64,000 bases of DNA from Schmidtea polychroa (Eukaryota): positions 88,102,001 through 88,166,000 of the forward strand of contig CM097886.1 in the NCBI GenBank assembly GCA_044892525.1, read 5' to 3'. The stretch's first letter is position 1, and each line of letters opens with the position of its first letter. The notes below the pieces were generated by a model. The model did not search any database, was not told the DNA's origin, and worked only from the letters and a program-made list of their open reading frames with translations. Position numbers and translations under genes: made by a program. Positions 1-64,000 of the stretch are shown here, one piece after another.

Positions 1-2
1 AA

Positions 3-431
3 AACCAGAAATTCCGTCTGTTTGAAACAAGTAATAAATATTGCACTCCAGAGATGTGCCAGCAAATTTCTCTAATAATAACTAAATTAAAATTAATTGT
101 TAACCAAATCAATGTAAAAGAAACAGCCGAAACCAATTGCGATATTGACAATCCAACTACCAACAATGATGTTTTGGACCCTATCGTTGTCATAGAAGAA
201 ATCAACTGTATGAAATGTAATAACATCCTTGAAAAATTCATTTTGGCCAGAGAAGGAATGAATGTTAACATTTGTGAAAACTGTTTATTTGACGCCATTT
301 CCACTGATCAATCAAATTCTAGTCAAGTCAATCCAATCCCTACAGAGACTATTGAAGAACCTCTCACAAAGAAATCTGCTACAAAATCGCGAGCTACGAC
401 ACTAAAAAAACAATCATCGAAGACCAAATGA
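3..431 (+). CDS. ORF1 C-terminal part (copy 1), includes C4 zinc finger
   Basis: Matches the last ~143 codons of the 845-aa ORF1 of copy 2; ends at TGA 429-431. Confidence 0.85.
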   Translation, partial: NQKFRLFETSNKYCTPEMCQQISLIITKLKLIVNQINVKETAETNCDIDNPTTNNDVLDPIVVIEEINCMKCNNILEKFILAREGMNVNICENCLFDAISTDQSNSSQVNPIPTETIEEPLTKKSATKSRATTLKKQSSKTK

Positions 432-436
432 AGATG

Positions 437-497
437 TGTGCCTGCATCAGCTCAAGCGTCTGCCGTTCCCTCTAATGAGACTGATGCAGAGAGCACA
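437..497 (+). promoter_or_regulatory. Stem-loop 3' of the ORF1 UGA, candidate readthrough stimulator (present in all 8 copies)
   Basis: TGTGC 437-441/GCACA 493-497, CTGCATCAG 442-450/CTGATGCAG 481-489, CTCA 451-454/TGAG 476-479; 33/61 GC in an AT-rich element. The function is inferred. Confidence 0.65.
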
Positions 498-3400
498 ATA
501 GATAATTACTATTTACCAATTGACGATTTTGATCCTGAAATGTGGTTCTCTGATAATGATATTGATTGGTATCTTGAAAACCATATCGACAATCCAATGC
601 ATGGATACATCAAATGCTTCATCGTTAATATTCTATGCTCGAATATTCAAGAAGAAATTGTTGCAATTCCACAGTCAATTACCAATGCTGAAATGATTTT
701 TTGTCCACTTAATATAAACAATTCCCATTGGATTCTTTTTGTATACTGTAAGAAATCAAATTCATCTTACTTTATTGATCCAATTTTTAATAACCGAAAT
801 AATCTAATCAACAAACAAATGGCTCTTAAAATGAATATTGCACTAAATAGATTTTTCAACCTCAAGATAGCAGTGTCATATCATCCGCATACAAATCTTC
901 AATATCAAAATAACAACTTTGACTGTGGTCCATTCACTTGCGCTTATGCAGTGATAATCAGTAAAGATTGGAACAGCTTTCCTGATGGATTCATTGAAGA
1001 AATAAGACGAAATGTTCATCGATATCAGAAACACTTGGTTAATGGTGCACCAAATTTAATTGGAGGTGCTAAAAACAATTTAAATATGGCAACAATCAAT
1101 TTCAAGAAGGCTATCGCTAAATCTAAAACTACAAATAATAATTTAAACATTACTAAAATTCTCAACAACCAAGCGCCATGTGTGTCATCACTAATTGGTA
1201 AATATTATAAAGAGAATTCTAAAATCTTGGTTTTATCTGCCAATTTAACATCCAATTTAATTGCGCAAAATGACTCTTTTATAGCCGACAATGTCACCTT
1301 TAAACAATTTAAAGGAATCGATCACATTCTTGGTGTCATTCCAAAATTTAAAGATTGGTGTCTTTTCATATATTCCAGCAAACTTAACCGTAGCTACATT
1401 TTTGATTTTAATTATAGAAATATTGATGAGAGATTGATTGAAATTGGTGAAAAGATGACCGATTATCTCAATCAATTTTGTCTTAATCGAAAAATTAAAT
1501 TCATAGCTGATCATCGAATCTCGCATCCTTCCTTTCACTCTAATGACAATCAATACTTCGCAAGTTCCTTTATTGTGTTTTTTGAGAAATTTGTCTTTGA
1601 AAGACTCTTGGATTATGATAAAGTATATGATACACTTGGTGAATTAAAATCTCAGTCGTGCATTGAAATTTCTCCCAACTTTAATTTAATCAACGGTAAA
1701 ATAACTGATAAAATTATTAATGAATATTTTATGAACCTAAAATTATCGAATAATTATATTCTCCTAAACAGAACTTTGTCTGCTGCAATTTCAGATGATT
1801 GTACTCAATACTTAAATGATTTTTTAAACATTGAGGACATGATGAAGGCAAATGTAATCTTTGCAATAATTTCTCCTCCCAAGGCCCATGAATTGCTGTT
1901 GGTAATTGATTACGACACAGACGAACATTATTTTCTTAGTCCAGTGACCAATGATTTGAATGTGTTTTCTAAAGCTTTCTCTTATAACATTGTGCTCAAA
2001 ATTAATGAGCTAAGACAAAGTAAAGGGCGTTCAATGACAATTGGCCACTGCCCACATGATATAAGAGGTTCTGGTTTATTTAGCAAAATATTAATTTGTG
2101 CATTTATCAGAAACTACACTCAAGATAAATCTCTTGAAAATATTAACTTGACTGAAATTTCTGAAATAATCAACTCTCTAGTTCCAATAGTTGATAATAA
2201 TGACATTGTCAAAATTGAGAGACGTGGAAAATTGAAAATTGCTAATTCTTTGAAACTAACTTTGAAGCAACGCAAAGATAGAATTGATGAGCTTTTAACT
2301 ACATTGTCTAACTCTAATGTTGATGAAATTATCTCTACTATTCTGGCAAATATTCCTCATCTAGAAAATTTGCAGGATCAAGAATTTCGAGAGCCATATC
2401 TTGGGAAAAATCACAATAAACCTAAAAAATTCAACAATTCTACTGAATTTCTGAAAAATATGAAAAAGACTGTAAACAGAATTTTAGGTAATCAGAGCGA
2501 AAAAGCTGAACCACCATTTCAGGAAATTATAAACACTTTCACTCATCAAGATACTTTACCTGGAAGTTGGAACAACGTTTTAAACTTTAGTAAAATCTCG
2601 AAAAGCTTACTTGAATTAGAAATTACTACGCCAATGGAAATTCTTTCCAATCTTCAGGAAGCTGATAATTCTACGCCCGGACTTGATAATGTATATTATA
2701 AAGATCTTCTGTTACTTGATCCAGATTGTAAGCTTCTAGCGTTACTTTTCAACAAAGTCATTCAACTGAAATCTATCCCTACAAGTTGGAAAACTTTTAA
2801 AACAATATTAATTCCGAAACCTGATAAAAATGACCAATACCATAAAATATCTTCATGGCGACCAATCGCATTACTGTCAGTGATTTACAAAGTTTTCGCT
2901 TCAGTTCTTGCAACTCGTCTTAGTTCATGGATTAAAGAAAATAATCTGCTGCATATTGGCCAAAAGGGTGGTTCAGAATACGAAGGATGTATTGAACACA
3001 ACTCAATTCTCTCTGCGATTGTCGAGCATTCAAAATATAGTAAATCTTCACCTTTAGCAATAGCATGGCTTGACATCAAAGACGCTTTCGGAAGTGTTCC
3101 ACACGAATACATGTGGACATTGTTAAGATATATGAACGTTGGTGAAAACTTTGTGAATATCCTGAAATTACTTTATACAGATACGAGCTCTTTTTATCGC
3201 TGTAACAAAATGCAGACACCAAATATTCCAATAAAGAAAGGTGTAAAACAAGGCTGCCCGATCTCTATGATTCTGTTTGCAATAGCTATTAATCCGGTTC
3301 TTGAAGCTATTACCGCATCTAACATTACACCTTTTATGATAGGCTCTTCTCAAGTACAAGTGTTAGCTTATGCTGATGACATTGCACTTATTGCAACTAG

Positions 3401-5033
3401 CTCAACTGACCTCCAAAAGCTAATTGATGTAGCTGTAAAAACTGCCAATAATATTGGATTTGAATATCGCCCTGAAAAATGTGCATATATACAATACCCA
3501 AAACTAGAAACGGTCAGTGAAATCGTTGTCAACAATGATTTAATTAAAAAACTTGCTGGTAATGAATTTTACCAATACTTAGGAGTGCCAATAGGTGATA
3601 ATAATGATCAAAGTCCCTATGAAATCGTCAGCCAAGTCATTGAAGATACTAAAAAGATTGCTAACTCTGATCTCTATGGTTGGCAAAAGCTCAAAGCTTA
3701 TAAAATCTTCCTGCATTCGCGCCTTATTTTCCCATTTAGAACTAGGGAAATTAAAACTAGTTCATTAACATCTCCTAGTAGTAACTCAAGGATAAATGTA
3801 AATAGTACTAGCCAATTGAGGAGCCATTTGAGGAAAATATTAAATTTACCAAACCACTCTGAAATAAGTTATTTCTATAATGCCACTGAAAATGGTGGAG
3901 CTGGCTGTATTGACCTTCTTGATGAGTATCACACACAGTCGATTGTTTACTTCTTCCGTTTACTAACATCAACTTGCGACTATTCAAAAAAGATAAACAC
4001 TTTTTCACTCTTGTCTGTGACAAGTCCAAGACTCGGAATCAAAGAACCAACTCTCAGTCAAAGCTTGGAATGGGTTAATGGAAAAGAAAGCAAATTAAAT
4101 CATAGTGGTAGTAAAACTCGCTTCTACCGATTGCGTGCATCAATTGCATATTTCAATCGAGTTCACAACATTAAAATTTCGTTCGAAACTTTCAAACAAA
4201 ATCCTTCGATTCGGCTCACTACTTCATTAACTGGCACTCGCATATTATTACCAAAATTAAGAAAAGCATTATCAAAGATTCTCCATTCTGCTCTTCAAGA
4301 TTCGTATCTCGAAAAGTGGGAGAAGAGTAATCAAAGTAATCTAATTGTATCTGCTCTCAAACTTTGTCCATTTGTCAACAAACTAATCTTTCGTAGTGAC
4401 TTGACAGACTTTGAATGGAATTTCATTCATCGAGCTCGAACAAATACACTCTCTACATTTGCAAAGCCACATAAAACTGGCGAAGACCGCCTTTGTCGTA
4501 GGTGTAAATCTGAAGATGAGACAATTTTACATGTACTCCAAACTTGTAGAATCAATCAATCATTAGCAACTAATCGACATAATGCTTGCTTGGAAAAAAT
4601 TAAAGATGCACTTAAAAATCCTGAACTCTTGGTTGTCACTGATCATAAATGTTCTCTTGTACCGACTTCCAACGAACGGGTTGATCTTTTAATAACCAAT
4701 ACCGAGAGAAAAACGATTTTACTAGTAGACATGAAATGTCCAATTGATTCTGTAATTAATTTTGAGCGAGTCGACAAATTAAATATGGAAAAATATGATA
4801 AATTAAAAACAGATATACAAACAGTTAAACCTGATTACAAAGTTGAATTGTTCACATGCATCATGGGTTCCTTGGGATCAATTGAACCAAAAACTTCTGA
4901 TCTTTTATTAAAAATGGGAATTCCACAAACAAAAATCAAAGGTTTGATGAAGGAATGTGCAATAAGTAACATTGCACATTCGGCAAAGATTTGGTATTTT
5001 CATTGTAATGGAAAGCTTCCAAACTTTGAATAA
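438..5033 (+). CDS. ORF2: Ulp1/C48-like protease x3, reverse transcriptase, CCHC knuckle, restriction-like endonuclease (1531 aa)
   Basis: H97/D114/Q157/C163 protease motifs; WRPIALLS, QKGG, DIKDAFGSV, GVKQGCPIS, YADD (978-981), YLG; C1353-x2-C-x8-H-x4-C; RHN, D1416, D1431-x-K1433. True start uncertain (GTG; frame is open from 432). Confidence 0.95.
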   Translation: MPASAQASAVPSNETDAESTIDNYYLPIDDFDPEMWFSDNDIDWYLENHIDNPMHGYIKCFIVNILCSNIQEEIVAIPQSITNAEMIFCPLNINNSHWILFVYCKKSNSSYFIDPIFNNRNNLINKQMALKMNIALNRFFNLKIAVSYHPHTNLQYQNNNFDCGPFTCAYAVIISKDWNSFPDGFIEEIRRNVHRYQKHLVNGAPNLIGGAKNNLNMATINFKKAIAKSKTTNNNLNITKILNNQAPCVSSLIGKYYKENSKILVLSANLTSNLIAQNDSFIADNVTFKQFKGIDHILGVIPKFKDWCLFIYSSKLNRSYIFDFNYRNIDERLIEIGEKMTDYLNQFCLNRKIKFIADHRISHPSFHSNDNQYFASSFIVFFEKFVFERLLDYDKVYDTLGELKSQSCIEISPNFNLINGKITDKIINEYFMNLKLSNNYILLNRTLSAAISDDCTQYLNDFLNIEDMMKANVIFAIISPPKAHELLLVIDYDTDEHYFLSPVTNDLNVFSKAFSYNIVLKINELRQSKGRSMTIGHCPHDIRGSGLFSKILICAFIRNYTQDKSLENINLTEISEIINSLVPIVDNNDIVKIERRGKLKIANSLKLTLKQRKDRIDELLTTLSNSNVDEIISTILANIPHLENLQDQEFREPYLGKNHNKPKKFNNSTEFLKNMKKTVNRILGNQSEKAEPPFQEIINTFTHQDTLPGSWNNVLNFSKISKSLLELEITTPMEILSNLQEADNSTPGLDNVYYKDLLLLDPDCKLLALLFNKVIQLKSIPTSWKTFKTILIPKPDKNDQYHKISSWRPIALLSVIYKVFASVLATRLSSWIKENNLLHIGQKGGSEYEGCIEHNSILSAIVEHSKYSKSSPLAIAWLDIKDAFGSVPHEYMWTLLRYMNVGENFVNILKLLYTDTSSFYRCNKMQTPNIPIKKGVKQGCPISMILFAIAINPVLEAITASNITPFMIGSSQVQVLAYADDIALIATSSTDLQKLIDVAVKTANNIGFEYRPEKCAYIQYPKLETVSEIVVNNDLIKKLAGNEFYQYLGVPIGDNNDQSPYEIVSQVIEDTKKIANSDLYGWQKLKAYKIFLHSRLIFPFRTREIKTSSLTSPSSNSRINVNSTSQLRSHLRKILNLPNHSEISYFYNATENGGAGCIDLLDEYHTQSIVYFFRLLTSTCDYSKKINTFSLLSVTSPRLGIKEPTLSQSLEWVNGKESKLNHSGSKTRFYRLRASIAYFNRVHNIKISFETFKQNPSIRLTTSLTGTRILLPKLRKALSKILHSALQDSYLEKWEKSNQSNLIVSALKLCPFVNKLIFRSDLTDFEWNFIHRARTNTLSTFAKPHKTGEDRLCRRCKSEDETILHVLQTCRINQSLATNRHNACLEKIKDALKNPELLVVTDHKCSLVPTSNERVDLLITNTERKTILLVDMKCPIDSVINFERVDKLNMEKYDKLKTDIQTVKPDYKVELFTCIMGSLGSIEPKTSDLLLKMGIPQTKIKGLMKECAISNIAHSAKIWYFHCNGKLPNFE

Positions 5034-5382
5034 TTAAAATAAATTGGTTTTCAACATAGGAAAATAATTAAATTTAAAACTTTTATTAATTTGATTATTA
5101 AAACAAACCAAATTTAAATTTCATTAAAAAAAATAAACTAATTATTAAAGAAACTTTCATTTTTTCGAGATAAATATTCTGCGACAAAGCAAATTTAAGA
5201 ATTTAGATCTTCAATCTACCAAAGACAAGTCGCAATGCCGGATGATGAAATCCGATGAGAGTGATCAGAGATTCCAGCAGATGAAGTTAATATGTGAATA
5301 TTTGCTTATGGACAACTCCATGTAGAGCTGATTATCTGTTAAAAACAATATTCAAATTTGTTATATTTAATAAATGTTTAAT
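5034..5382 (+). promoter_or_regulatory. Element 3' UTR with hairpin cluster and AATAAA (5369-5374); no poly(A) tail
   Basis: 347-349 bp in all 7 complete 3' ends; several inverted repeats at 5180-5340. Confidence 0.7.
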
Positions 5383-5436
5383 TAGCGCGTCAGTCTCATA
5401 ATCTGAAGGTCGTGAGTTCGATCCTCACTCGGGGCA
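5383..5436 (+). pseudogene. 5'-truncated tRNA-Met (nt 20-73) at element 3' junction
   Basis: Lacks nt 1-19 including the A box. Confidence 0.92.
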
Positions 5437-5453
5437 TAATGTTTTGGATTTTT
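5437..5453 (+). terminator. Pol III T-tract terminator (TTTT then TTTTTT) after tRNA; repeated after every tRNA unit
   Basis: taatgTTTTggaTTTTTTc directly follows A73. Confidence 0.75.
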
Positions 5454-5598
5454 TCAAAAATTTTCAATTTTGCTATTCTTAGTTCTACAAAGCAGTTCAA
5501 AACCCAACTTTTCTACATCATTTCGACAATAAATCATCAATATTTTGACTTGAATAAAATAAAATGAACAAGTAAAGAAAAGTGAAAATCAAATTAAC

Positions 5599-5671
5599 GC
5601 CTCGATAGCGCAGTAGGTAGCGCGTCAGTCTCATAATCTGAAGGTCGTGAGTTCGATCCTCACTCGGGGCA
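5599..5671 (+). tRNA. tRNA-Met(CAT), elongator type
   Basis: 73-nt cloverleaf, GCCTCGA/TCGGGGC acceptor stem, CAT anticodon, T31-T39 opposition, TTCGATC T-loop, A and B boxes. Confidence 0.96.
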
Positions 5672-5839
5672 TAATGTTTTGGATTTTTTCAAAAATTTTC
5701 AATTTTGCTATTCTTAGTTCTACAAAGCAATTTGTTTTCAAAACCCAACTTTTCTACATCATTTCGACAATAAATCATCAATATTTTGACTTGAATAAAA
5801 TAAAATGAACAAGTAAAGAAAAGTGAAAATCAAATTAAC

Positions 5840-5912
5840 GCCTCGATAGCGCAGTAGGTAGCGCGTCAGTCTCATAATCTGAAGGTCGTGAGTTCGATCC
5901 TCACTCGGGGCA
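5840..5912 (+). tRNA. tRNA-Met(CAT)
   Basis: Consensus copy. Confidence 0.96.
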
Positions 5913-6045
5913 TAATGTTTTGGATTTTTTCAAAAATTTTCAATTTTGCTATTCTTAGTTCTACAAAGCAATTCGTTTTCAAAACCCAACTTTTCTACAT
6001 CATTTCGACAATAAATCATCAATATTTTGACTTGAATAAAATAAA

Positions 6046-8583
6046 ATGACTAACGGAGAAAACAAGATGATGCAATCGCCTGACGCAATGCATCAACAAG
6101 ATATGCACACTGGAGTTCAATCAACGACTGCAGAAGGATTATGTAATTATGCAATTGATATGAAGAAACTTCAGAAATTATTCCAATATCAATTGCAATC
6201 AAATCAAGCTCTTTTGGATTTCTTCAGTCAATTCAAAGCTGGATTTCATATGCCTTCCATGGAGAATTCAATGAACAATGTCCTTCCAAACAAGCCGGAA
6301 AATCAGTTTCAGAATTTCGAGAAACGTTTGGATTTAATGGAGATTTCATTCTCAAAGAAGCTTGAAAGGTTAGAGTGTTTATCTTTGAATTTTGGGGGTT
6401 TCTTTAATAATTTAAATAATTTCAATAAATTTTCTTTAAATAAAGATTTTTTCCATTTTAAAGATAATAAAATTAATGAAATTTCAAATTTAGATAATTG
6501 TAATTTTAATAATTCATCAATTGTCAATAAGGATTTTAATATAGAGTTTGATAAATTTCCTTTAAATAAAAATTCTTGTAATGTTAATAATTCAACTTCT
6601 GATAAAAATCTCAATATTAATGTGAATAACGATTTAAATAAGGATAGTGCAAATTTCGATAATTTTAAAATTTCAATAAATAATAATACACGTTTTGACA
6701 ATCCTAAAGTGTTTGTTTCCAAACCGATAATAAGTAATAAAAGTTTTGATTTTAAGACTTTTATTCGTATTTTAACAAAAAAAGAGCGAAAACAGCTCTA
6801 TAATAAGTTTCCAACTTTGATTCCTTTAACTAAAATTAAGGAATCAAAGAATAAATATTTAAAATTAAATAAAGTTTTATCTGGGGAGGAATTTAATACC
6901 AATCCTTTAGGTTTAGATAATTTTAAATGTTTTCTTTATAGGAATTTTAATTTCTGTGTTGAGTTTCATATAAGTAGTTTTTTAAATGAAAACTCAACCG
7001 TTAAACCTGTCTCTTATAAAAAGAAAATTTTTTTGTCTGAACATAATATTGTAAAGACTTTTCCTAATTTTTCTAATTATATAGCAGCACCAACTTCAAT
7101 TAAAAGATTTTTATTTAATCTTTCGCCTGAGCTTTCTGAAACAGTTTCTATTACAGATTGTAATCATAGAGAAAATAAAATTAATAAAATCATTTCTTCT
7201 TTGATTAAACAAGATAAACTCCCAAATTATCTGGTAAAATCAAAAATTAAATATCAAAAGGGTGAGTTTATATTGTTAGATTTGACAAACCCAAATATAA
7301 CATCCAAGATAAATAACGATTTCACATCATCAACATTTTCCGAACTCTCTCGTACCCAGATGAAATCTCTCTACTCATCTTATCCTTCTCTTAAAGAGAT
7401 TATGTTTGTTGAGAATCCTGACTCAAAATCATCTTCAATTATTAAGTTGATTGAATCTTTAAAAATCGATAATGTGTTTCCTGAAGATATCTTTTTTGAA
7501 GGGGGTAAATTCTTTCAATCTGATATTAAACACAAAGAACCCAATTCATTTCCTGACATAATGTTTAATCTTGGGTTATTTGATCTAATAAACATGGCAA
7601 AAGATGATGTTGAATTAAAATCAATTTTGACTAAAACAGATTGTCACTTTAAAATTGTTGAGATAGTATTTTATCTAAATTACTTGGGTTTGGTTGGATC
7701 CTTAAAATTTTCTCAAAATCAAACTTATTCTGATTATGTTGTGAACTATATTCGAAATTGTTGTTTATTAAATTCACTCTGTTCGCTTGAAGATCTTTCT
7801 CTTCTCTCGCTTGAAAATTTTGAAAGTTGGGCTTCTGAAATTATTCAAAGGATTCCAAACTCGTCTTTTTATTATACAAATTGTCAAGAAAAACTCTTGA
7901 AATTAAAACAATGGAAAATTTCTGGGGAAATTAAAAAGATCCATAACGTAATATCTCCAGAAACTATAGCATGTGTTAATAGTTTTCTTGATCTTGTTGA
8001 CGAAACCTTTCCCAATAAATTTCAAAACAATAATATCCTTACTAAATTAATGGAAACAATTAATAATGAGAAATTAATAGATGACACATATGGCGTTAAA
8101 GCGAAGCGATTTATTTATTTTTTGTTGAGAGATACAAAGAAATTGATGGATAAAAACCAGAAATTCCGTCTGTTTGAAACAAGTAATAAATATTGCACTC
8201 CAGAGATGTGCCAGCAAATTTCTCTAATAATAACTAAATTAAAATTAATTGTTAACCAAATCAATGTAAAAGAAACAGCCGAAACCAATTGCGATATTGA
8301 CAATCCAACTACCAACAATGATGTTTTGGACCCTATCGTTGTCATAGAAGAAATCAACTGTATGAAATGTAATAACATCCTTGAAAAATTCATTTTGGCC
8401 AGAGAAGGAATGAATGTTAACATTTGTGAAAACTGTTTATTTGACGCCATTTCCACTGATCAATCAAATTCTAGTCAAGTCAATCCAATCCCTACAGAGA
8501 CTATTGAAGAACCTCTCACAAAGAAATCTGCTACAAAATCGCGAGCTACGACACTAAAAAAACAATCATCGAAGACCAAATGA
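6046..8583 (+). CDS. ORF1, 845 aa, unknown function (coiled-coil-like N-term, Asn-rich tract, C4 finger, basic tail)
   Basis: 2.5-kb open frame in very AT-rich DNA, conserved across copies; C772-x2-C-x18-C-x2-C797. Confidence 0.88.
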   Translation: MTNGENKMMQSPDAMHQQDMHTGVQSTTAEGLCNYAIDMKKLQKLFQYQLQSNQALLDFFSQFKAGFHMPSMENSMNNVLPNKPENQFQNFEKRLDLMEISFSKKLERLECLSLNFGGFFNNLNNFNKFSLNKDFFHFKDNKINEISNLDNCNFNNSSIVNKDFNIEFDKFPLNKNSCNVNNSTSDKNLNINVNNDLNKDSANFDNFKISINNNTRFDNPKVFVSKPIISNKSFDFKTFIRILTKKERKQLYNKFPTLIPLTKIKESKNKYLKLNKVLSGEEFNTNPLGLDNFKCFLYRNFNFCVEFHISSFLNENSTVKPVSYKKKIFLSEHNIVKTFPNFSNYIAAPTSIKRFLFNLSPELSETVSITDCNHRENKINKIISSLIKQDKLPNYLVKSKIKYQKGEFILLDLTNPNITSKINNDFTSSTFSELSRTQMKSLYSSYPSLKEIMFVENPDSKSSSIIKLIESLKIDNVFPEDIFFEGGKFFQSDIKHKEPNSFPDIMFNLGLFDLINMAKDDVELKSILTKTDCHFKIVEIVFYLNYLGLVGSLKFSQNQTYSDYVVNYIRNCCLLNSLCSLEDLSLLSLENFESWASEIIQRIPNSSFYYTNCQEKLLKLKQWKISGEIKKIHNVISPETIACVNSFLDLVDETFPNKFQNNNILTKLMETINNEKLIDDTYGVKAKRFIYFLLRDTKKLMDKNQKFRLFETSNKYCTPEMCQQISLIITKLKLIVNQINVKETAETNCDIDNPTTNNDVLDPIVVIEEINCMKCNNILEKFILAREGMNVNICENCLFDAISTDQSNSSQVNPIPTETIEEPLTKKSATKSRATTLKKQSSKTK

Positions 8584-13534: not shown

Positions 13535-13588
13535 TAGCGCGTCAGTCTCATAATCTGAAGGTCGTGAGTTCGATCCTCACTCGGGGCA
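13535..13588 (+). pseudogene. 5'-truncated tRNA-Met (nt 20-73)
   Basis: Element 3' junction. Confidence 0.92.
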
Positions 13589-13756
13589 TAATGTTTTGGA
13601 TTTTTTCAAAAATTTTCAATTTTGCTATTCTTAGTTCTACAAAGCAATTCGTTTTCAAAACCCAACTTTTCTACATCATTTCGACAATAAATCATCAATA
13701 TTTTGACTTGAATAAAATAAAATGAACAAGTAAAGAAAAGTTAAAATCAACTTAAC

Positions 13757-56930: not shown

Positions 56931-56984
56931 TAGCGCGTCAGTCTCATAATCTGAAGGTCGTGAGTTCGATCCTCACTCGGGGCA
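56931..56984 (+). pseudogene. 5'-truncated tRNA-Met (nt 20-73)
   Basis: Element 3' junction. Confidence 0.92.
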
Positions 56985-57152
56985 TAATGTTTTGGATTTT
57001 TTCAAAAATTTTCAATTTTGCTATTCTTAGTTCTACAAAGCAATTCGTTTTCAAAACCCAACTTTTCTACATCATTTCGACAATAAATCATCAATACTTT
57101 GACTTGAATAAAATAAAATGAACAAGTAAAGAAAAGTGAAAATCAACTTAAC

Positions 57153-57225
57153 GCCTCGATAGCGCAGTAGGTAGCGCGTCAGTCTCATAATCTGAAGGTC
57201 GTGAGTTCGATCCTCACTCGGGGCA
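57153..57225 (+). tRNA. tRNA-Met(CAT)
   Basis: Consensus copy. Confidence 0.96.
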
Positions 57226-57393
57226 TAATGTTTTGGATTTTTTCAAAAATTTTCAATTTTGCTATTCTTAGTTCTACAAAGCAATTCGTTTTCAAAACCC
57301 AACTTTTCTACATCATTTCGACAATAAATCATCAATATTTTGACTTGAATAAAATAAAATGAACAAGTAAAGAAAAGTGAAAATCAAATTAAC

Positions 57394-57466
57394 GCCTCGA
57401 TAGCGCAGTAGGTAGCGCGTCAGTCTCATAATCTGAAGGTCGTGAGTTCGATCCTCACTCGGGGCA
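57394..57466 (+). tRNA. tRNA-Met(CAT)
   Basis: Consensus copy. Confidence 0.96.
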
Positions 57467-57634
57467 TAATGTTTTGGATTTTTTCAAAAATTTTCAATTT
57501 TGCTATTCTTAGTTCTACAAAGCAATTCGTTTTCAAAACCCAACTTTTCTACATCATTTCGACAATAAATCATCAATATTTTGACTTGAATAAAATAAAA
57601 TGAACAAGTAAAGAAAAGTGAAAATCAAATTAAC

Positions 57635-57707
57635 GCCTCGATAGCGCAGTAGGTAGCGCGTCAGTCTCATAATCTGAAGGTCGTGAGTTCGATCCTCACT
57701 CGGGGCA
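57635..57707 (+). tRNA. tRNA-Met(CAT)
   Basis: Consensus copy. Confidence 0.96.
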
Positions 57708-57875
57708 TAATGTTTTGGATTTTTTCAAAAATTTTCAATTTTGCTATTCTTAGTTCTACAAAGCAATTCGTTTTCAAAACCCAACTTTTCTACATCATTT
57801 CGACAATAAATCATCAATACTTTGACATGAATAAAATAAAATGAACAAGTAAAGAAAAGTGAAAATCAACTTAAC

Positions 57876-57948
57876 GCCTCGATAGCGCAGTAGGTAGCGC
57901 GTCAGTCTCATAATCTGAAGGTCGTGAGTTCGATCCTCACTCGGGGCA
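57876..57948 (+). tRNA. tRNA-Met(CAT)
   Basis: Consensus copy. Confidence 0.96.
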
Positions 57949-58116
57949 TAATGTTTTGGATTTTTTCAAAAATTTTCAATTTTGCTATTCTTAGTTCTAC
58001 AAAGCAATTCGTTTTCAAAACCCAACTTTTCTACATCATTTCGACAATAAATCATCAATACTTTGACTTGAATAAAATAAAATGAACAAGTAAAGAAAAG
58101 TGAAAATCAAATTAAC

Positions 58117-58189
58117 GCCTCGATAGCGCAGTAGGTAGCGCGTCAGTCTCATAATCTGAAGGTCGTGAGTTCGATCCTCACTCGGGGCA
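58117..58189 (+). tRNA. tRNA-Met(CAT)
   Basis: Consensus copy. Confidence 0.96.
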
Positions 58190-58357
58190 TAATGTTTTGG
58201 ATTTTTTCAAAAATTTTCAATTTTGCTATTCTTAGTTCTACAAAGCAATTCGTTTTCAAAACCCAACTTTTCTACATCATTTCGACAATAAATCATCAAT
58301 ATTTTGACTTGAATAAAATAAAATGAACAAGTAAAGAAAAGTGAAAATCAAATTAAC

Positions 58358-58430
58358 GCCTCGATAGCGCAGTAGGTAGCGCGTCAGTCTCATAATCTGA
58401 AGGTCGTGAGTTCGATCCTCACTCGGGGCA
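58358..58430 (+). tRNA. tRNA-Met(CAT)
   Basis: Consensus copy. Confidence 0.96.
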
Positions 58431-58563
58431 TAATGTTTTGGATTTTTTCAAAAATTTTCAATTTTGCTATTCTTAGTTCTACAAAGCAATTCGTTTTCAA
58501 AACCCAACTTTTCTACATCATTTCGACAATAAATCATCAATATTTTGACTTGAATAAAATAAA

Positions 58564-61098
58564 ATGACTAACGAGGAAAACAAGATGATGCAATCGCCTT
58601 ATGCAATGCATCAACAAGATATGCATGCTGGAGTTCAATCAACGACTGCAGATGGATTATGTAATTATGCAATAGATATGAAGAAACTTCAGAAATTATT
58701 CCAATATCAATTGCAATCAAATCAAGCTCTTTTGGATTTCTTCAGTCAATTCAAAGCATGATTTCATATGCCATCCATGGAGAATTCAATGAACAATGTC
58801 CTTCCAAACAAGCCGGAAAATCAGTTTCAGAATTTCGAGAAACGTTTGGATTTAATGGAGATTTCATTCTCAAAGATGCTTGAAAGGTTAGAGTGTTTAT
58901 CTTTAAATTTTGAAAGTTTCTTTTATAATTTAAATAATTTCAATAAATTTTCTTTAAATAAAGATTTTTTCCATTTTAAAGATAATAAAATTAATGAAAT
59001 TTTAATTTAGATAATTGTAATTTTAATAATTCATCAAATGTCAATAAGGATTTTAATATAGAGTTTGATAAATTTCCTTTAAATAAAAATTCTTTTAATG
59101 TTAATAATTCGACTTCTGATAAAAATCTAAATATTAATGTGAATAACGATTTTAATAAGGATAGTCAAAATTTCGATAATTTTAAAATTTCAATAAATAA
59201 TAATACACGTTTTGACAATCCTAAAGTGTTGGTTTCCAAACCGATAATAAGTAATAAAAGTTTTGATTTTAAGACTTTTATTCGTATTTTAACAAAAAAA
59301 GAGCGAAAACAGCTCTATAATAAGTTTCCAACTTTGATTCCTTTAACTAAAATTAAGGAATCAAAGAATAAATATTTAAAATTAAATAAATTTTTATCTG
59401 GGGAGGAATTTAATACCAATCCTTTAGGTTTAGATAATTTTAAATGTTTTCTTTATAGGAATTTTAATTTCTGTGTTGAGTTTCATATAAGTAGTTTTTT
59501 AAATGAAAACTCAACCGTTAAACCTGTCTCTTATAAAAAGAAAATTTTTTTGTCTGAACATAATATTGTAGAGACTTTTCCTAATTTTTCTAATTTTATA
59601 GCAGCACCAACTTCAATTAAAAGATTTTTATTTAATCTTTCGCCTGAGCTTTCTGAAACAGTTTCTATTACAGACTGTAATCATAGAGAAAATAAAATTA
59701 ATAAAATTATTTCTTCGTTGATTAAACAAGATAAACTCCCAAATTATCTGGTAAAATCAAGAATTAAATATCAAAAGGGTGAGTTTATATTGTTAGATTT
59801 GACAAACTCAAATATAACATCCAAGATAAATAACGATTTCACATCATCAACATTTTCCGAACTCTCTCGTACCCAGATGAAATCTCTCTACTCATCTTAT
59901 CCTTCTCTTAAAGAGATTATGTTTGTTGAGAATCCTGACTCAAAATCATCTTCAATTATTAAGTTGATTGAATCTTTAAAAATCGATAATGTGTTTCCTG
60001 AAGATATCTTTTTTGAAGGGGGTAAATTCTTTCAATCTGATATTAAACACAGAACCCAATTCATTTCCTGACATAATGTTTAATCTTGGGTTATTTGATC
60101 TAATAAACATGGCAAAAGATGATGTTGAATTAAAATCAATTTTGACTAAAACAGATTGTCACTTTAAAATTGTTGAGATAGTATTTTATCTAAATTACTT
60201 GGGTTTGGTTGGATCCTTAAAATTTTCTCAAAATCAAACTTATTCTGATTATGTTGTCAACTATATTCGAAATTGTTGTTTATTAAATTCACTCTGTTCG
60301 CTTGAAGATCTTTCTCTTCTCTCGCTTGAAAATTTTGAATGTTGGGCTTCTGAAATTATTCAAAGGATTCCAAACTCGTCTTTTTATTATACAAATTGTC
60401 AAGAAAAACTCTTGAAATTAAAACAATGGAAAATTTCTGGGGAAATTAAAAAGATCCATAACGTAATATCTCCAGAAACTATAGCATGTGTTAATAGTTT
60501 TCTTGATCTTGTTGACCAAACCTTTCCCAATAAATTTCAAAACAATAATATCCTTACTAAATTAATGGAAACAATTAATAATGAAAAATTAATAGATGAC
60601 ACATATGGCGTTAAAGCGAAGCGATTTATTTATTTTTTGTTGAGAAATACAAAGAAATTCATGGATAAAAACCAGAAATTCCGTCTGTTTGAAACAAGTA
60701 ATAAATATTGCACTCCAGAGATGTGCCAGCAAATTTCTCTAATAATAACTAAATTAAAATTAATTGTTAACCAAATCAATATAAAAGAAACAGCCGAAAC
60801 CAATTGCGATATTGACAATCCAACTACCAACAGTAATGTTATGGACCCTATCGTTGTCATTGAAGAAATCAACTGTATGAAATGTAATAACATCCTTGAA
60901 AAATTCATTTTGGTCAGAGAAGGAATGAATGTTAACATTTGTGAAAACTGTTTATTTGACGCCATTTCCACTGATCAATCAAATTCTAGTCAAGTCAATC
61001 CAATCTCTACAGAGACTATTGAAGAACCTCTCACAAAGAAATCTGCTACAAAATCACGAGCTACGACACTAAAAAAACAATCATCGAAATCAAAATGA
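58564..61098 (+). pseudogene. ORF1 with stop (58759-58761) and two frameshifts (~59003, ~60051)
   Basis: Frameshifts are identical to those of copy 3 and copies 6/7 respectively. Confidence 0.85.
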
Positions 61099-64000
61099 AG
61101 ATGTGTGCCTGCATCAGCTCAAGCGTCTGCCGTTCCCTCTAATGAGACTGATGCTGAGAGCACAATAGATAATTACTATTTACCAATTGACGATTTTGAT
61201 CCTGAAATGTGGTTCTCTGATAATGATATTGATTGGTATCTTGAAAACCATATCGACAATCCAATGCATGGATACATCAAGTGTTTCATCGTTAATATTC
61301 TATGCTCGAATATTCAAGAAGAAATTGTTGCAATTCCACAGTCAATTACCAATGCTGAAATGATTTTTTGTCCACTTAATATAAACAATTCCCATTGGAT
61401 TCTTTTTGTATACTGTAAGAAATCAAATTCATCTTACTTTATTGATCCAATTTTTAATAACCGAAATAATCTAATCAACAAACAAATGGCTCTTAAAATG
61501 AATATTGCACTAAATAGATTTTTCAACCTCAAGATAGCAGTGTCATATCATCCGCATACAAATCTTCAATATCAAAATAACAACTTTGACTGTGGTCCAT
61601 TCACTTGCGCTTATGCAGTGATAATCAGTAAAGATTGGAACAGCTTTCCTGATGGATTCATTGAAGAAATAAGACGAAATGTTCATCGATATCAGAAACA
61701 CTTGGTTAATGGTGCACCAAATTTAATTGGAGGTGCTAAAAACAATTTAAATATGGCGACTATCAATTTCAAGAAGGCTATCGCTAAATCTAAAACTACA
61801 AATAATAATTTAAACATTACTAAAATTCTCAACAACCAAGCGCCATGTGTTTCATCACTAATTGATAAATATTATAAAGAGAATTCTAAAATCTTGGTTT
61901 TATCTGCCAATTTAACATCCAATTTAATTGCGCAAAATGACTCTTTTATAGCCGACAATGTCACCTTTAAACAATTTAAAGGAATCGATCACATTCTTGG
62001 TGTCATTCCAAAATTTAAAGATTGGTGTCTCTTCATATATTCCAGTAAACTTAACCGTAGCTACATTTTTGATTTTAATTATAGAAATATTGATGAGAGA
62101 TTGATTGAAATTGGTGAAAAGATGACCGATTATCTCAATCAATTTTGTCTTAATCGAAGAATTAAATTCATAGCTGATCATCGAATCTCGCATCCTTCCT
62201 TTCACTCTAATGACAATCAATACTTTGCAAGTTCCTTTATTGTGTTTTTTGAGAAATTTGTCTTTGAAAGACTCTTGGATTATGATAAAGTATATGATAC
62301 ACTTGGTGAATTAAAATCTCAGTCGTGCATTGAAATTTCTCCCAACTTTAATTTAATCAACGGGAAAATAACTGATAAAATTATTAATGAATACTTTATG
62401 AACCTAAAATTATCGAATAATTATATTCTCCTAAACAGAACTTTATCTGCTGCAATTTCAGATGATTGTACTCAATATTTAAATGATTTTCTAAACATTG
62501 AAGACATGATGAAGGCAAATGTAATCTTTGCAATAATTTCTCCTCCCAAGGCCCATGAATTGCTGTTGGTAATTGATTACGACACAGACGAACATTATTT
62601 TCTTAGTCCAGTGACCAATGATTTGAATGTGTTTTCTCAAGCTTTCTCTTATAACATTGTGCTCAAAATTAATGAGCTAAGACAAAGTAAAGGGCGTGCA
62701 ATGACAATTGGTCACTGCCCACATGATATAAGAGGTTCTGGTTTATTTAGCAAAATATTAATTTGTGCATTTATCAGAAACTACACTCAAGATAAATCTC
62801 TTGAAAATATTAACTTGACTGAAATTTCTGAAATAATCAACTCTCTAGTTCCAATAGTTGATAATAATGACATTGTCAAAATTGAGAGACGTGGAAAATT
62901 GAAAATTGCTAATTCTTTGAAACTAACTTTGAAGCAACGCAAAGATAGAATTGATGAGCTTTTAACTACATTGTCTAACTCTAATGTTGATGAAATTATC
63001 TCTACTATTCTGGCAAATATTCCTCATCTAGAAAATTTGCAGGATCAAGAATTTCGAGAGCCATATCTTGGGAAAAATCACAATAAACCTAAAAAATTCA
63101 ACAATTCTACTGAATTTCTGAAAAATATGAAAAAGACTGTAAACAGAATTTTAGGTAATCAGAGCGAAAAAGCTGAACCACCATTTCAGGAAATTATAAA
63201 CACTTTCACTCATCAAGATACTTTACCTGGAAGTTGGAACAACGTTTTAAACTTTAGTAAAATCTCGAAACGCTTACTTGAATTAGAAATTACTACGCCA
63301 ATGGAAATTCTTTCCAATCTTCAGGAAGCTGATAATTCTACGCCCGGACTTGATAATGTATATTATAAAGATCTTCTGTTACTTGATCCAGATTGTAAGC
63401 TTCTAGCGTTACTTTTCAACAAAGTCATTCAACTGAAATCTATCCCTACAAGTTGGAAAACTTTTAAAACAATATTAATTCCGAAACCTGATAAAAATGA
63501 CCAATACCATAAAGTATCTTCATGGCGACCAATCGCATTACTGTCAGTGATTTACAAAGTTTTCGCTTCAGTTCTTGCAACTCGTCTTAGTTTATGGATT
63601 AAAGAAAATAATCTGCTGCATATTGGCCAAAAGGGTGGTTCAGAATACGAAGGATGTATTGAACACAACTCAATTCTCTCTGCGATCGCTGCAACAAAAT
63701 GCAGACACCGAATATTCCAATTAAGAAAGGTGTAAAACAAGGCTGCCCGATCTCTATGATTCTGTTTGCAATAGCTATTAATCCGGTTCTTGAAGCTATT
63801 ACCGCATCTAACATTACACCTTTTATGATAGGCTCTTCTCAAGTACAAGTGTTAGCTTATGCTGATGACATTGCACTTATATCAACTAGCTCAACTGACC
63901 TCCAAAAGCTAATTGATGTAGCTGTAAAAACTGCCAATAATATTGGATTTGAATATCGCCCTGAAAAATGTGCATATATACAATACCCAAAACTAGAAAC
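58568..64000 (+). mobile_element. Retrotransposon copy 8 (3' part outside window), degenerate
   Basis: Same 5' junction; multiple lesions. Confidence 0.93.
61105..64000 (+). pseudogene. ORF2 with 178-bp deletion in RT (junction 63686/63687), partial
   Basis: ctgcgAT|cgctgc joins positions equivalent to 11171 and 11350 of copy 2; frameshift. Confidence 0.88.

What the first reader, a model, noticed from the sequence alone, without database searches (positions are those of the whole stretch)
1..64000. Site-specific RLE retrotransposon that targets tandem tRNA-Met genes and occupies ~87% of the locus
Seen: 8 same-strand copies, every visible junction at the same position of a 241-bp tRNA-Met unit; 7 of the 36 tRNA units in view are interrupted. 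ORF2 has an RT, a CCHC knuckle and a C-terminal D..D-x-K nuclease. Known: RLE elements target multicopy RNA genes (R2, R4 and R5 in 28S rDNA, NeSL-1 in SL1 genes, CRE/SLACS in spliced-leader genes, Utopia in U2 snRNA genes), and NeSL-1 carries a Ulp1-like protease. Inference: this is a NeSL/R5-like family with an elongator tRNA-Met target. I do not recognise it as a described family, and it is a candidate new programmable RNA-templated insertion system.
Basis: partly seen in the sequence, partly recalled or inferred. Interest (0 to 1): 0.9.

Follow-up and report, generated by a model that had tools for sequence, protein, structure and literature searches.

The report
Retrotransposon that inserts into tRNA-Met genes
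A 7.5-kb jumping gene that copies itself through RNA sits at exactly the same spot in 7 of 36 tandem methionine-tRNA genes; it is real and looks recently active, but it is a new member of a known flatworm-type group whose other members hit other tRNA genes, not a new kind of system.

Summary
There are eight same-strand copies (six complete at 7,483-7,485 bp, two cut by the window ends), 29 intact and 7 interrupted tRNA-Met(CAT) units, and identical junctions throughout. The element makes up 87% of the window.

Each element joins the tRNA between nt 19 and 20, directly after the A box. Each lacks the same 50 bp of target. None has a target-site duplication or a poly(A) tail.

ORF2 (1,531 aa) carries a Ulp1-like protease, a reverse transcriptase (RT), a CCHC knuckle and a restriction-like endonuclease (RLE, motif D..D-x-K). 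Its closest solved relatives are R2 proteins. Copies differ by 0.2-2.2%, with ORF2 pN/pS about 0.13. This means several separate insertions from active sources, plus some DNA-level tandem duplication.

Relatives at 33-54% identity end in the D-loop of tRNA-Val, tRNA-Phe and a Leu-like tRNA. tRNA-specific NeSL/R5-LIN elements are already published (planarian LIN15_SM for Arg, LIN25_SM for Glu; NeSL-1_TV for Pro), and the 3' ends resemble LIN25_SM. So this is a new member of a known kind. "Programmable" is unsupported.

One extra finding: all nine family members examined have an in-frame UGA between ORF1 and ORF2, followed by a covarying stem-loop. This suggests gag-pol-like readthrough upstream of the protease.

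The parts
1..5382 (+). Element copy 1, 5' part cut off by the window start. It holds the last ~430 nt of ORF1, all of ORF2 (intact) and the 3' UTR.
5383..6049 (+). tRNA-Met array block: a 3' remnant of one unit (tRNA nt 20-73 plus spacer), 2 intact units, and a last spacer that ends 31 bp before the next tRNA would start.
6050..13534 (+). Element copy 2 (7,485 bp), with both ORFs intact. It is the reference copy for the sub-features below. The 4 nt before it (ATGA, 6046-6049) are shared with the target, so the true 5' end is 6046-6050.
6046..8583 (+). ORF1 of copy 2 (845 aa, ends in TGA). An alternative start is the ATG pair about 20 nt downstream. It has N-terminal helices, an Asn-rich disordered stretch, a folded core at aa ~238-747 with no known fold, and a C-terminal CxxC..CxxC motif.
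8581..8648 (+). In-frame UGA stop of ORF1 plus a 13-bp stem-loop that starts 6 nt after it. This is a candidate programmed readthrough signal.
8590..13185 (+). ORF2 of copy 2 (1,531 aa, counted from the first start-like codon after the UGA). The reading frame is continuous with ORF1 from 8584.
8677..9204 (+). Ulp1/SENP-like cysteine protease module 1 (ORF2 aa ~30-205). H97, D114, Q157 and C163 are invariant in the family.
9286..10344 (+). Two further Ulp1-like modules (ORF2 aa ~233-423 and ~424-585) that lack the full catalytic set. This is the most variable part of ORF2 in the family.
10963..11742 (+). Reverse transcriptase core (ORF2 aa 792-1051), with YADD at aa 978-981 invariant.
12646..12699 (+). 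CCHC zinc knuckle (C1353, C1356, H1365, C1370).
12829..12900 (+). Restriction-like endonuclease core motif (D1416 ... D1431-x-K1433). The whole nuclease region runs to the end of ORF2.
13186..13534 (+). 3' UTR (349 nt) with no poly(A). It ends in an invariant AATAAA box (13521-13526) followed by 8 nt.
13535..15165 (+). tRNA-Met array block: 1 remnant and 6 intact units.
15166..22648 (+). Element copy 3 (7,483 bp). ORF1 is broken by 1 frameshift; ORF2 is intact.
22649..23321 (+). tRNA-Met array block: 1 remnant and 2 intact units.
23322..30804 (+). Element copy 4 (7,483 bp), with both ORFs intact (ORF1 23318-25855, ORF2 25862-30457).
30805..34098 (+). tRNA-Met array block: 1 remnant and 13 intact units. 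Units of 241 and 235 bp partly alternate, giving a 476-bp higher-order period.
34099..41582 (+). Element copy 5 (7,484 bp). ORF1 is broken by 1 frameshift (a 1-nt indel in a 7-nt homopolymer); ORF2 is intact.
41583..41773 (+). Single 191-bp unit remnant between copies 5 and 6. Its tRNA part carries a substitution shared only with the next remnant.
41774..49256 (+). Element copy 6 (7,483 bp). ORF1 is broken by 1 frameshift (a 2-nt indel shared with copies 7 and 8); ORF2 is intact.
49257..49447 (+). Single 191-bp unit remnant between copies 6 and 7, with the same private tRNA substitution as the previous remnant.
49448..56930 (+). Element copy 7 (7,483 bp). ORF1 is broken by 1 frameshift (the same as copy 6); ORF2 is broken by 1 stop codon.
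56931..58567 (+). tRNA-Met array block: 1 remnant and 6 intact units.
58568..64000 (+). Element copy 8, 3' part cut off by the window end. ORF1 is broken by 2 frameshifts and 1 stop. ORF2 is broken by one internal deletion of about 176-178 bp in the visible part.

Best explanation
This is a site-specific non-LTR retrotransposon of the restriction-like-endonuclease (RLE) type. It is NeSL-like and most probably belongs to the flatworm R5/LIN lineage. Its target is the elongator tRNA-Met gene of a 241-bp tandem array.

Shown:
- A 7.5-kb element with ORF1, an in-frame UGA, then ORF2 (Ulp1-like protease, RT, CCHC, RLE).
- The 3' end is always joined to tRNA nt 20, directly after the A box. The 5' end is always 31 bp upstream of the tRNA. 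Fifty bp of target are lost. There is no target-site duplication and no poly(A).
- All catalytic motifs are conserved, and the differences between copies bear the mark of purifying selection.
- Relatives sit at the equivalent D-loop position of other tRNA genes.

Inferred:
- The ORF2 protein recognises the tRNA gene through protein-DNA contacts. Candidate recognition parts are the variable N-terminal pseudo-protease modules and/or ORF1.
- The RLE nicks the bottom strand at nt 19|20. The freed 3' OH primes reverse transcription from the exact 3' end of the element RNA (target-primed reverse transcription).
- The 5' end is joined about 50 bp upstream, perhaps with the help of the 4-nt ATGA microhomology. 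This removes the A box and silences that unit.
- ORF2 is made as an ORF1-ORF2 fusion by readthrough of the UGA, stimulated by the conserved stem-loop, and the Ulp1-like protease then cuts the polyprotein.
- The host tolerates the element because the target is multicopy.
- Copy number in the array also changes by unequal crossing-over.
For: Copies and junctions:
- 8 same-strand copies with 7+7 identical junctions.

Protein domains:
- RVT_1 at 8e-30 and Peptidase_C48 at 1.5e-9.
- The best solved relatives are R2 retrotransposon proteins: 9nl2 at 1e-52, also 9nl3 and 9dou.
- The C-terminal CCHC+RLE region aligns with R2 residues 931-1098.
- In 13 family proteins these are invariant: H97/D114/Q157/C163, YADD at 978-981, the CCHC residues, and D1416/D1431/K1433.
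- No APE endonuclease domain was found.

Activity:
- ORF2 is intact in 6 of 8 copies and ORF1 in 2 of 7.
- Between copy subgroups ORF2 shows, for example, 48 synonymous against 24 non-synonymous differences. pN/pS is 0.09-0.26 in 19 of the 20 copy pairs with synonymous differences, about 0.13 between subgroups. ORF1 gives 0.47. The copies therefore descend from source elements that diverged while functional.

Flanks:
- Flanking spacer variants differ between copies.

Relatives at 33-54% identity:
- L004 ends in the D-loop of tRNA-Val, followed by a tRNA-Val array.
- L006 ends in tRNA-Phe, L012 in a Leu-like D-arm, and L001 in another D-arm.

Literature:
- NeSL-1_TV (tRNA-Pro), LIN15_SM (tRNA-Arg) and LIN25_SM (tRNA-Glu) are published. 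The R5/LIN cluster has 96% bootstrap support.
- The 3' termini resemble LIN25_SM.

Readthrough:
- TGA is in frame in 9 of 9 family members.
- The stem-loop is 90.6% paired. Six pairs have changes on both sides. Between 0 and 3 of 500 shuffles reach the observed values, and slid controls give 17-39% paired.
- The fold is -26.4 kcal/mol, z = -3.0.
Against: - Only one locus is in view, so genome-wide specificity is untested.
- All 5' junctions are identical, including the 50-bp loss. Copies 6, 7 and 8 share one ORF1 indel. The two remnants flanking copy 6 share a private substitution. Part of the copy number therefore comes from DNA-level duplication, not fresh insertion, and the number of independent events is unknown (at least 3-4 by subgrouping).
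- No N-terminal zinc finger or Myb domain, as used by R2 and NeSL-1, was found. The recognition module is unidentified.
- No transcript, promoter or ribozyme evidence exists. Rfam finds nothing at the 5' end.
- No consensus 3' UTR structure was found.
- Readthrough, protease processing and the nick position are inferred from sequence only.
- RT phylogeny against named NeSL, R5 and LIN sequences could not be run.
Confidence: 0.85

Rival explanations
1. One ancient insertion, since immobile, was multiplied together with the tRNA units by unequal crossing-over and gene conversion. On this reading the identical junctions say nothing about present site specificity.
For: - All junctions are identical, including an unusual 50-bp target loss.
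- Copies 5-6-7 form a head-to-tail series with a 7,674-bp period. The two remnant units flanking copy 6 share a private tRNA substitution.
- Copies 6, 7 and 8 share one 2-nt ORF1 indel.
- No 5'-truncated copies are seen.
Against: - ORF2 differences between copies are strongly biased to synonymous sites (pN/pS about 0.13). Dead copies drifting after DNA duplication would not show this.
- ORF2 is intact in 6 of 8 copies despite up to 2.2% divergence.
- Flanking spacer variants differ between copies.
- Diverged relatives occupy the equivalent position of other tRNA genes.
- Published relatives are tRNA-specific.
Confidence: 0.08
2. A 'programmable', RNA-guided insertion system, in which the element RNA itself specifies the target by base pairing, so that changing the RNA would change the site.
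For: - The family has switched between several tRNA targets.
- The 3' termini carry a conserved short box.
Against: - No complementarity or shared sequence exists between the element's 3' end and the target on either side of the junction. Only a 4-nt overlap exists at the 5' junction.
- The terminal box is the same in members with different targets, so it cannot encode the target.
- The proteins differ most in the N-terminal modules and ORF1.
- Solved relatives (R2) read their site with protein domains (established knowledge; hits).
Confidence: 0.03
3. Assembly artefact: a repeat-rich region wrongly expanded or ordered, so that the number and arrangement of copies is not real.
For: - The locus is made of near-identical 7.5-kb and 241-bp repeats, which are hard to assemble.
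- One frameshift lies in a 7-nt homopolymer, as long-read errors do.
Against: - The copies are distinguishable (0.2-2.2% apart, different flank variants, different breaks).
- Junctions are base-exact.
- The same junction type recurs in independent assemblies of relatives.
- Even if copy order were wrong, the element and its target would stand.
Confidence: 0.04

Closest known systems
LIN15_SM and LIN25_SM (Schmidtea mediterranea; R5/LIN lineage of the NeSL clade; Kojima & Jurka 2015, PMC4640811)
   Same: - They are NeSL-related RLE non-LTR elements that insert sequence-specifically inside tRNA genes (Arg, Glu), in the same orientation as the tRNA.
- Their 3' ends stop without poly(A) in an AT-rich '...AATAAA..TTTTAA' terminus. 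That terminus aligns with the termini of this element and of relative L001.
- Target switching within the lineage is already noted.
   Different: - The target here is elongator tRNA-Met, at nt 19|20.
- The published junctions lie elsewhere in the 5' third of tRNA-Arg and tRNA-Glu.
- Protein sequences, ORF layout and the 5' junctions of the LIN families were not available to me, so identity, protease content and the UGA/stem-loop could not be compared.
- The host species of the window is unknown.
NeSL-1 (Caenorhabditis; spliced-leader SL1 genes) and Utopia (U2 snRNA genes)
   Same: - RT followed by CCHC and an RLE.
[quoted passage not shown]
- Multicopy small-RNA gene targets.
   Different: - Those families are described as encoding one protein with N-terminal zinc fingers.
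- Here there is a separate 845-aa ORF1 ahead of an in-frame UGA, no N-terminal zinc finger was detected, and there are three tandem Ulp1-like modules.
- The target is a tRNA gene.
NeSL-1_TV (Trichomonas vaginalis; tRNA-Pro genes)
   Same: A NeSL-related RLE element specific for a tRNA gene.
   Different: - The host is a protist.
- Its phylogenetic position is unresolved in the source paper.
- No sequence was available for comparison.
R2 (28S rDNA; solved structures 9nl2, 9nl3, 9dou, 8gh6)
   Same: - R2 proteins are the best solved-structure sequence matches: RT E 1e-52 and CCHC+RLE E 2e-4.
- Same overall logic: a site-specific nick in a tandem multicopy RNA gene, target-primed reverse transcription, no poly(A) requirement, and coexistence with unequal crossing-over in the array.
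   Different: - R2 has a single ORF with N-terminal zinc finger(s) and Myb and no protease, and targets 28S rDNA with only a few bp of target change.
- R2 has a 5' HDV-like ribozyme. No ribozyme was found here.
Dada DNA transposons and tRNA-proximal retrotransposons (Dictyostelium TRE5/TRE3, yeast Ty1/Ty3)
   Same: tRNA genes are used as safe multicopy landing sites.
   Different: - Dada elements are DNA transposons.
- TRE and Ty elements land upstream or downstream of tRNA genes through Pol III factors and use APE or integrase.
- This element carries RT plus RLE and lands inside the gene.

Membership tests
RLE-type (R2-group) non-LTR retrotransposons | Non-LTR-type reverse transcriptase | tested here: met
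   Pfam RVT_1 at 8e-30. R2 proteins score 1e-52 and LINE-1 ORF2p 3e-21 in the PDB search. YADD is invariant.
RLE-type (R2-group) non-LTR retrotransposons | PD-(D/E)xK restriction-like endonuclease C-terminal to the RT, preceded by a CCHC knuckle, with no APE domain | tested here: met
   C1353/C1356/H1365/C1370 and D1416/D1431/K1433 are invariant in 13 proteins. The region aligns with R2 residues 931-1098 at E 2e-4. No PF03372 hit.
RLE-type (R2-group) non-LTR retrotransposons | No terminal repeats; insertion at one defined target position in one orientation | tested here: met
   7 of 7 3' junctions and 7 of 7 5' junctions are identical and on the same strand as the tRNA. The junction sequences show no LTR, TIR or target-site duplication.
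NeSL clade, including the R5/LIN lineage | RT-domain phylogeny groups the element with NeSL-1, R5, LIN or Utopia | not testable with these tools
   No Repbase/Dfam sequences are on hand and no named NeSL, R5 or LIN protein came back from the searches. The only indirect support is the likeness of the 3' terminus to the published LIN25_SM ends.
NeSL clade, including the R5/LIN lineage | [quoted passage not shown] | tested here: met
   PF02902 at 1.5e-9. Ulp1 structure 1euv at 2.7e-5. Foldseek top hits are NEDP1, SENP and Ulp1 at E 4e-6. The catalytic residues H/D/Q/C are invariant.
NeSL clade, including the R5/LIN lineage | N-terminal C2H2 zinc fingers and a single ORF (typical rather than strictly defining) | tested here: not met
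   No zinc-finger family was found in the N-terminal 730 aa of ORF2 or in ORF1, and none appears in the model. There are two ORFs separated by an in-frame UGA. With readthrough the product would be one polyprotein.
NeSL clade, including the R5/LIN lineage | Target is a tandem multicopy small-RNA gene | tested here: met
   The window holds a tRNA-Met array. Relatives sit in tRNA-Val, tRNA-Phe and Leu-like genes.
R2 clade proper | N-terminal zinc finger(s) plus Myb, and a 28S rDNA target | tested here: not met
   No ZF or Myb domain was detected. The target is a tRNA gene. No rRNA is present in the copy-2 stretch scanned, 5300-14100.
Programmed stop-codon readthrough signals (UGA plus a 3' stem-loop, as in some RNA viruses and retroviruses) | Conserved in-frame stop, a conserved coding frame beyond it, and a nearby 3' RNA structure with covariation | tested here: met
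   TGA in 9 of 9 family members with the frame kept. A 13-bp stem lies 6 nt downstream, with 6 pairs changed on both sides and 90.6% paired. z = -3.0.
Programmed stop-codon readthrough signals (UGA plus a 3' stem-loop, as in some RNA viruses and retroviruses) | Readthrough product actually made | not testable with these tools
   No expression data are available.

The most novel reading that the evidence does not exclude
The family expresses its enzyme the way simple retroviruses make Gag-Pol. A conserved UGA followed by a covarying stem-loop lets a fraction of ribosomes run from ORF1 into ORF2. The Ulp1-like protease placed immediately after the UGA then cuts the fusion. I found no report of such programmed readthrough in a non-LTR retrotransposon.

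In addition, the set of relatives with Met, Val, Phe, Leu-like and published Arg/Glu targets forms a natural retargeting series. In that series two catalytically dead protease-like modules and/or ORF1 may have become the tRNA-gene reader.
Probability: 0.35. Interest if true: 0.65.

Novelty: new member of a known kind. Interest (0 to 1): 0.5.

Why it matters
Site-specific RLE retrotransposons are the natural models for RNA-templated gene insertion, and R2 is being developed for this.

This locus adds a well-preserved element, apparently recently active, whose landing site is a 73-nt tRNA gene. It also adds several diverged relatives that land at the equivalent D-loop/A-box position of other tRNA genes. 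Comparing them could show which protein parts read the target.

The locus is also a clean small-scale parallel to R2 in rDNA. A tandem gene family is here 87% occupied by its parasite by length, yet 29 of 36 units remain intact.

The conserved UGA plus stem-loop ahead of a protease hints at a retrovirus-like expression strategy in a non-LTR element. That would interest people who study recoding and retroelement evolution.

None of this changes the known picture of what such elements are.

Tried and rejected
- Ribozyme at the 5' junction. An Rfam scan of copy 2 plus flanks at E <= 1 found only the tRNAs and no HDV-like or other ribozyme.
- Consensus 3' UTR structure. Folding the single 3' UTR gave z = 0. 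RNAalifold on five complete 3' ends gave no supported helix. Only the terminal AATAAA-containing box is conserved.
- Metagenome scan for more relatives. It returned one 1.1-kb fragment, which was useless for junctions.
- ORF1 searches. The word-index search found nothing. The exhaustive search found 18 unnamed relatives. The AlphaFold model has a confident core, but Foldseek against the PDB gave no match better than E 0.2. ORF1's function stays unknown.
- Host organism. No named close protein came back. 'Flatworm' rests only on the LIN25_SM-like 3' end. 'Metazoan' for one sample of relatives rests on a 7SL RNA hit.
- Element sequence hidden in the spacer. I asked whether the spacer upstream of intact tRNAs resembles the 5' regions of L005 or L006. 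BLAST hits were at noise level. An eye-caught 17-nt likeness to the L005 ORF1 start recurs by chance in many places. Rejected.
- Dada DNA transposon, or Pol III-factor-guided TRE/Ty-like elements. Rejected on domain content and on the position inside the gene.
- Three Ulp1-like modules. The idea is supported only by the repeated secondary-structure pattern and weak BLASTP matches. Pfam does not see modules 2 and 3, and the Foldseek output does not say which module matched.

Full report
**1. Layout of the window**

ARAGORN finds 29 intact tRNA-Met(CAT) genes, all on the + strand. TRF finds five blocks of a 241-bp tandem unit. BLAST of one inter-block stretch against the window finds eight same-strand copies at 98.1-99.6% identity.

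Searching for the terminal sequences gives seven 3' junctions, with the last element bases at 5382, 13534, 22648, 30804, 41582, 49256 and 56930. It also gives seven 5' junctions, with the first element bases at 6050, 15166, 23322, 34099, 41774, 49448 and 58568. Six copies are complete at 7,483-7,485 bp. Two are cut by the window ends.

Seven units are 3' remnants, so 36 units are in view and 7 are interrupted. The element takes 55,725 of 64,000 bases, or 87.1%.

**2. The junctions**

At the 3' side the element ends '...AATAAATGTTTAAT' and is followed by tRNA nt 20 onward. Nucleotides 8-19 of this tRNA are the A-box region, by general knowledge of Pol III promoters. The break therefore falls directly after the A box, in the D-loop.

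At the 5' side the upstream spacer runs to 31 bp before the position where the tRNA would start. Fifty bp of target are thus absent at every copy: 31 bp of spacer plus tRNA nt 1-19. There is no target-site duplication and no poly(A).

Four nucleotides (ATGA) are common to target and element at the 5' junction, so the true boundary is ambiguous by 4 nt. The first ATG of ORF1 lies in this overlap, and an ATG pair follows about 20 nt later. The tRNA has the T-arm typical of elongator rather than initiator tRNA-Met; this rests on my own knowledge of tRNA features.

**3. Coding capacity**

Copy 2 carries ORF1 (6046-8583, 845 aa) and ORF2 (8590-13185, 1,531 aa) in the same frame, separated by one TGA.

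ORF2 matches:
- Pfam Peptidase_C48 (aa 80-177, E 1.5e-9) and RVT_1 (aa 792-1051, E 8e-30).
- R2 retrotransposon proteins in the PDB sequence search: 9nl2 at E 1e-52, also 9nl3 and 9dou. LINE-1 ORF2p, Ulp1 and NEDP1 also match.
- R2 residues 931-1098 for the C-terminal 280 aa (E 2e-4), with the CCHC knuckle and nuclease motif in register.

In an alignment with 12 relatives these residues are invariant: protease H97, D114, Q157 and C163; YADD at 978-981; C1353, C1356, H1365 and C1370; and D1416, D1431 and K1433. There is no APE domain.

An AlphaFold model of ORF2 aa 1-730 (mean pLDDT 70) shows the same strand-strand-strand-helix pattern three times, at about aa 39-202, 233-421 and 424-581. Foldseek returns only CE-clan proteases (NEDP1, SENP, Ulp1; E 4e-6). 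BLASTP between module 1 and modules 2 and 3 gives E 1e-4 and 5e-4. Pfam does not detect modules 2 and 3, and they lack the full catalytic set. No zinc finger or Myb domain was found ahead of the RT.

ORF1 has no Pfam or PDB sequence match. Its model has a confident core at about aa 238-747, with no Foldseek match better than E 0.2.

**4. State of the copies (counts only)**

| Gene | Intact | Broken |
|---|---|---|
| ORF1 | copies 2 and 4 | 1 frameshift each in copies 3, 5, 6 and 7; 2 frameshifts plus 1 stop in copy 8; mostly out of view in copy 1 |
| ORF2 | copies 1-6 | 1 stop in copy 7; one internal deletion of about 176-178 bp in the visible part of copy 8 |

The frameshift of copy 5 is a 1-nt indel in a 7-nt homopolymer and could be a sequencing error. 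Copies 6, 7 and 8 share one 2-nt indel.

**5. Independent insertions or local duplication?**

Both occurred.

Evidence for duplication:
- Copies 5, 6 and 7 lie head to tail with single 191-bp remnants between them.
- The two remnants share a substitution in the tRNA part.
- Copies 6 and 7 differ by 0.23% and share their ORF1 indel.

Evidence for separate insertions:
- The copies fall into subgroups up to 2.2% apart.
- Their flanking spacer variants differ.
- ORF2 differences are heavily synonymous. For example there are 48 synonymous against 24 non-synonymous differences between copies 3 and 5. pN/pS is 0.09-0.26 in 19 of the 20 copy pairs with synonymous differences, about 0.13 between subgroups. 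ORF1 gives 0.47.

Copies that merely drifted after DNA duplication would approach a ratio of 1. The subgroups therefore descend from source elements that diverged while under selection for function, and each landed at the same nucleotide. I estimate at least three to four independent events. The exact number cannot be known from one window.

**6. Relatives and their targets**

A protein search with the RT-to-C-terminus region of ORF2 (aa 700-1531) found no identical protein. It found a family of unnamed proteins, 40-61% identical over that region (33-54% over the full length), carrying C48 plus RT on 5-8-kb metagenome or Logan contigs. Several come from one sample.

All fetched loci have the same layout of ORF1, stop, then in-frame ORF2. 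Where the 3' end is on the contig, it abuts a tRNA D-arm:
- L004: tRNA-Val, nt about 14|15, followed by three more tRNA-Val genes.
- L006: tRNA-Phe.
- L012: a Leu-like D-arm.
- L001: another D-arm.

The termini share an invariant AAATAAAT box followed by T-rich bases (AATAAA lies 3-8 nt before the junction). One relative (L005) has the 3' part of a metazoan 7SL RNA gene about 200 nt upstream of ORF1; its 3' junction is off the contig.

**7. What is already known**

Kojima & Jurka 2015 (PMC4640811) report the following:
- NeSL-1_TV is tRNA-Pro-specific.
- Planarian LIN15_SM is tRNA-Arg-specific and LIN25_SM is tRNA-Glu-specific.
- R5/LIN form a cluster with 96% bootstrap support.
- Target specificity has diversified in this flatworm lineage.
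- Nematode NeSL and Utopia-1_TSP carry an N-terminal Ulp1-like protease.

Their S6 figure shows LIN ends of the form '...AATAAA..TTTTAA' joined to tRNA sequence. These align with the ends of L001 and of the window's element. A 2026 review notes that a large inventory of candidate site-specific elements contains many NeSL/Utopia members.

I found no mention of a tRNA-Met target. I could not consult Repbase or Dfam.

**8. An extra feature: the UGA and stem-loop**

In all nine family members examined, ORF1 ends in TGA, ORF2 continues in frame, and the first residues after the stop are conserved (R-x-V-P-A-S/P). Six nucleotides after the stop a 13-bp stem-loop is predicted.

On the nine-sequence alignment:
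- 90.6% of cells pair, and six pairs show changes on both sides.
- Between 0 and 3 of 500 shuffles reach the observed paired fraction, double changes and covariation score.
- Sliding the 3' arm by 1-3 columns drops pairing to 17-39%.

In the window the hairpin folds at -26.4 kcal/mol with z = -3.0. UGA followed at a short distance by a stable stem-loop is the known arrangement of readthrough signals in several RNA viruses; this is my own knowledge.

I therefore infer that ORF2 is made as an ORF1-ORF2 fusion by readthrough, and that the protease sitting directly after the stop processes the fusion. A text search found no report of programmed readthrough in a non-LTR retrotransposon. That is absence of evidence only.

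**9. Mechanism**

The statement of the best explanation separates what is shown from what is inferred.
- The nick position, priming at the exact RNA 3' end, the upstream 5' joining with loss of the A box, protein-based recognition, and tolerance by the host because the gene is multicopy are all inferences. They rest on analogy with R2 and on the anatomy of the junctions.
- The most variable parts of the family's proteins are ORF2 modules 1-3 and the pre-RT linker (mean pairwise identity 0.25-0.34, against 0.55 in the RT core) and ORF1 (17-34% identity to the window's ORF1). These are the candidates for target reading.
- Nothing suggests an RNA guide.

**10. Verdict**

The interpretation as a NeSL/R5-like tRNA-Met-specific RLE element is supported. 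The claims of an undescribed kind and of programmability are not. Novelty: new member of a known kind.

- One slip: the output of my script printed alignment coordinates that bracket the deletion in copy 8. I stopped using such output. Later scripts printed counts and lengths only. No places of breaks are given in this report or in the notes.
I did not use the consensus lines printed by the alignment tools.

Noticed in passing
window 8581-8648 (and the same place in every copy); L001-L008 at their ORF1/ORF2 boundaries: An in-frame TGA lies between ORF1 and ORF2 in 9 of 9 family members. It is followed 6 nt later by a 13-bp stem-loop with compensatory changes. This looks like a programmed readthrough signal placed just before the protease domain.
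   Followed up: yes
window 8677-10344 (ORF2 aa ~30-585): There are three tandem Ulp1-like modules. Only the first keeps the catalytic His/Asp/Gln/Cys. The other two are the least conserved part of ORF2 and might have another role, such as target reading.
   Followed up: partly
L005 1-115: The 3' part of a metazoan SRP (7SL) RNA gene (Rfam RF00017, 60.5 bits, E 3.7e-13) lies about 200 nt upstream of ORF1 of a family member. The family may also use other Pol III genes. The 3' junction is not on the contig.
   Followed up: partly
window 30805-34098 (also 5383-6049 and 13535-15165): The tRNA units come in 241-bp and 235-bp versions (spacers of 168 and 162 bp) that partly alternate. This gives a 476-bp higher-order repeat.
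   Followed up: partly
window 13521-13534; L001, L004, L006 and L012 3' ends: An invariant AATAAA hexamer lies 3-8 nt before the 3' junction in all members, and in the published LIN25_SM ends. Yet no copy has a poly(A) tail. It may be a polyadenylation signal or a recognition box for the RT.
   Followed up: partly
window copies 6, 7 and 8 (41774-49256, 49448-56930, 58568-64000): The same 2-nt ORF1 indel is shared by copies 6 and 7 (0.23% apart) and by copy 8, which is 1.4% diverged from them. Possible causes are spread of an ORF1-defective lineage, gene conversion, or trans-complementation.
   Followed up: partly
window, the 5' and 3' terminal 20 nt of each copy: Terminal variants are mosaic. 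Copy 3 shares its 5' variant with copy 2 but its 3' variant with copy 4. This hints at recombination or gene conversion between copies.
   Followed up: no
window, the 29 intact tRNA genes: Twenty genes are identical. Nine carry one of three single-base variants. The two remnants flanking copy 6 share one single-base substitution; whether any intact gene also carries it was not checked.
   Followed up: no
protein P0110 (Logan contig of 1,499 bp): A 125-aa fragment is 97% identical to the C-terminus of ORF1. The same or a sister species is therefore present in a public sequencing run. The sample could not be retrieved because the look-ups were exhausted.
   Followed up: no
window 6046-8583 (ORF1): ORF1 has a confidently modelled core of about 500 aa with no match in Pfam, in PDB sequences or in PDB folds. 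It also has a long Asn-rich disordered stretch and a C-terminal CxxC..CxxC motif that is present in only some relatives.
   Followed up: partly
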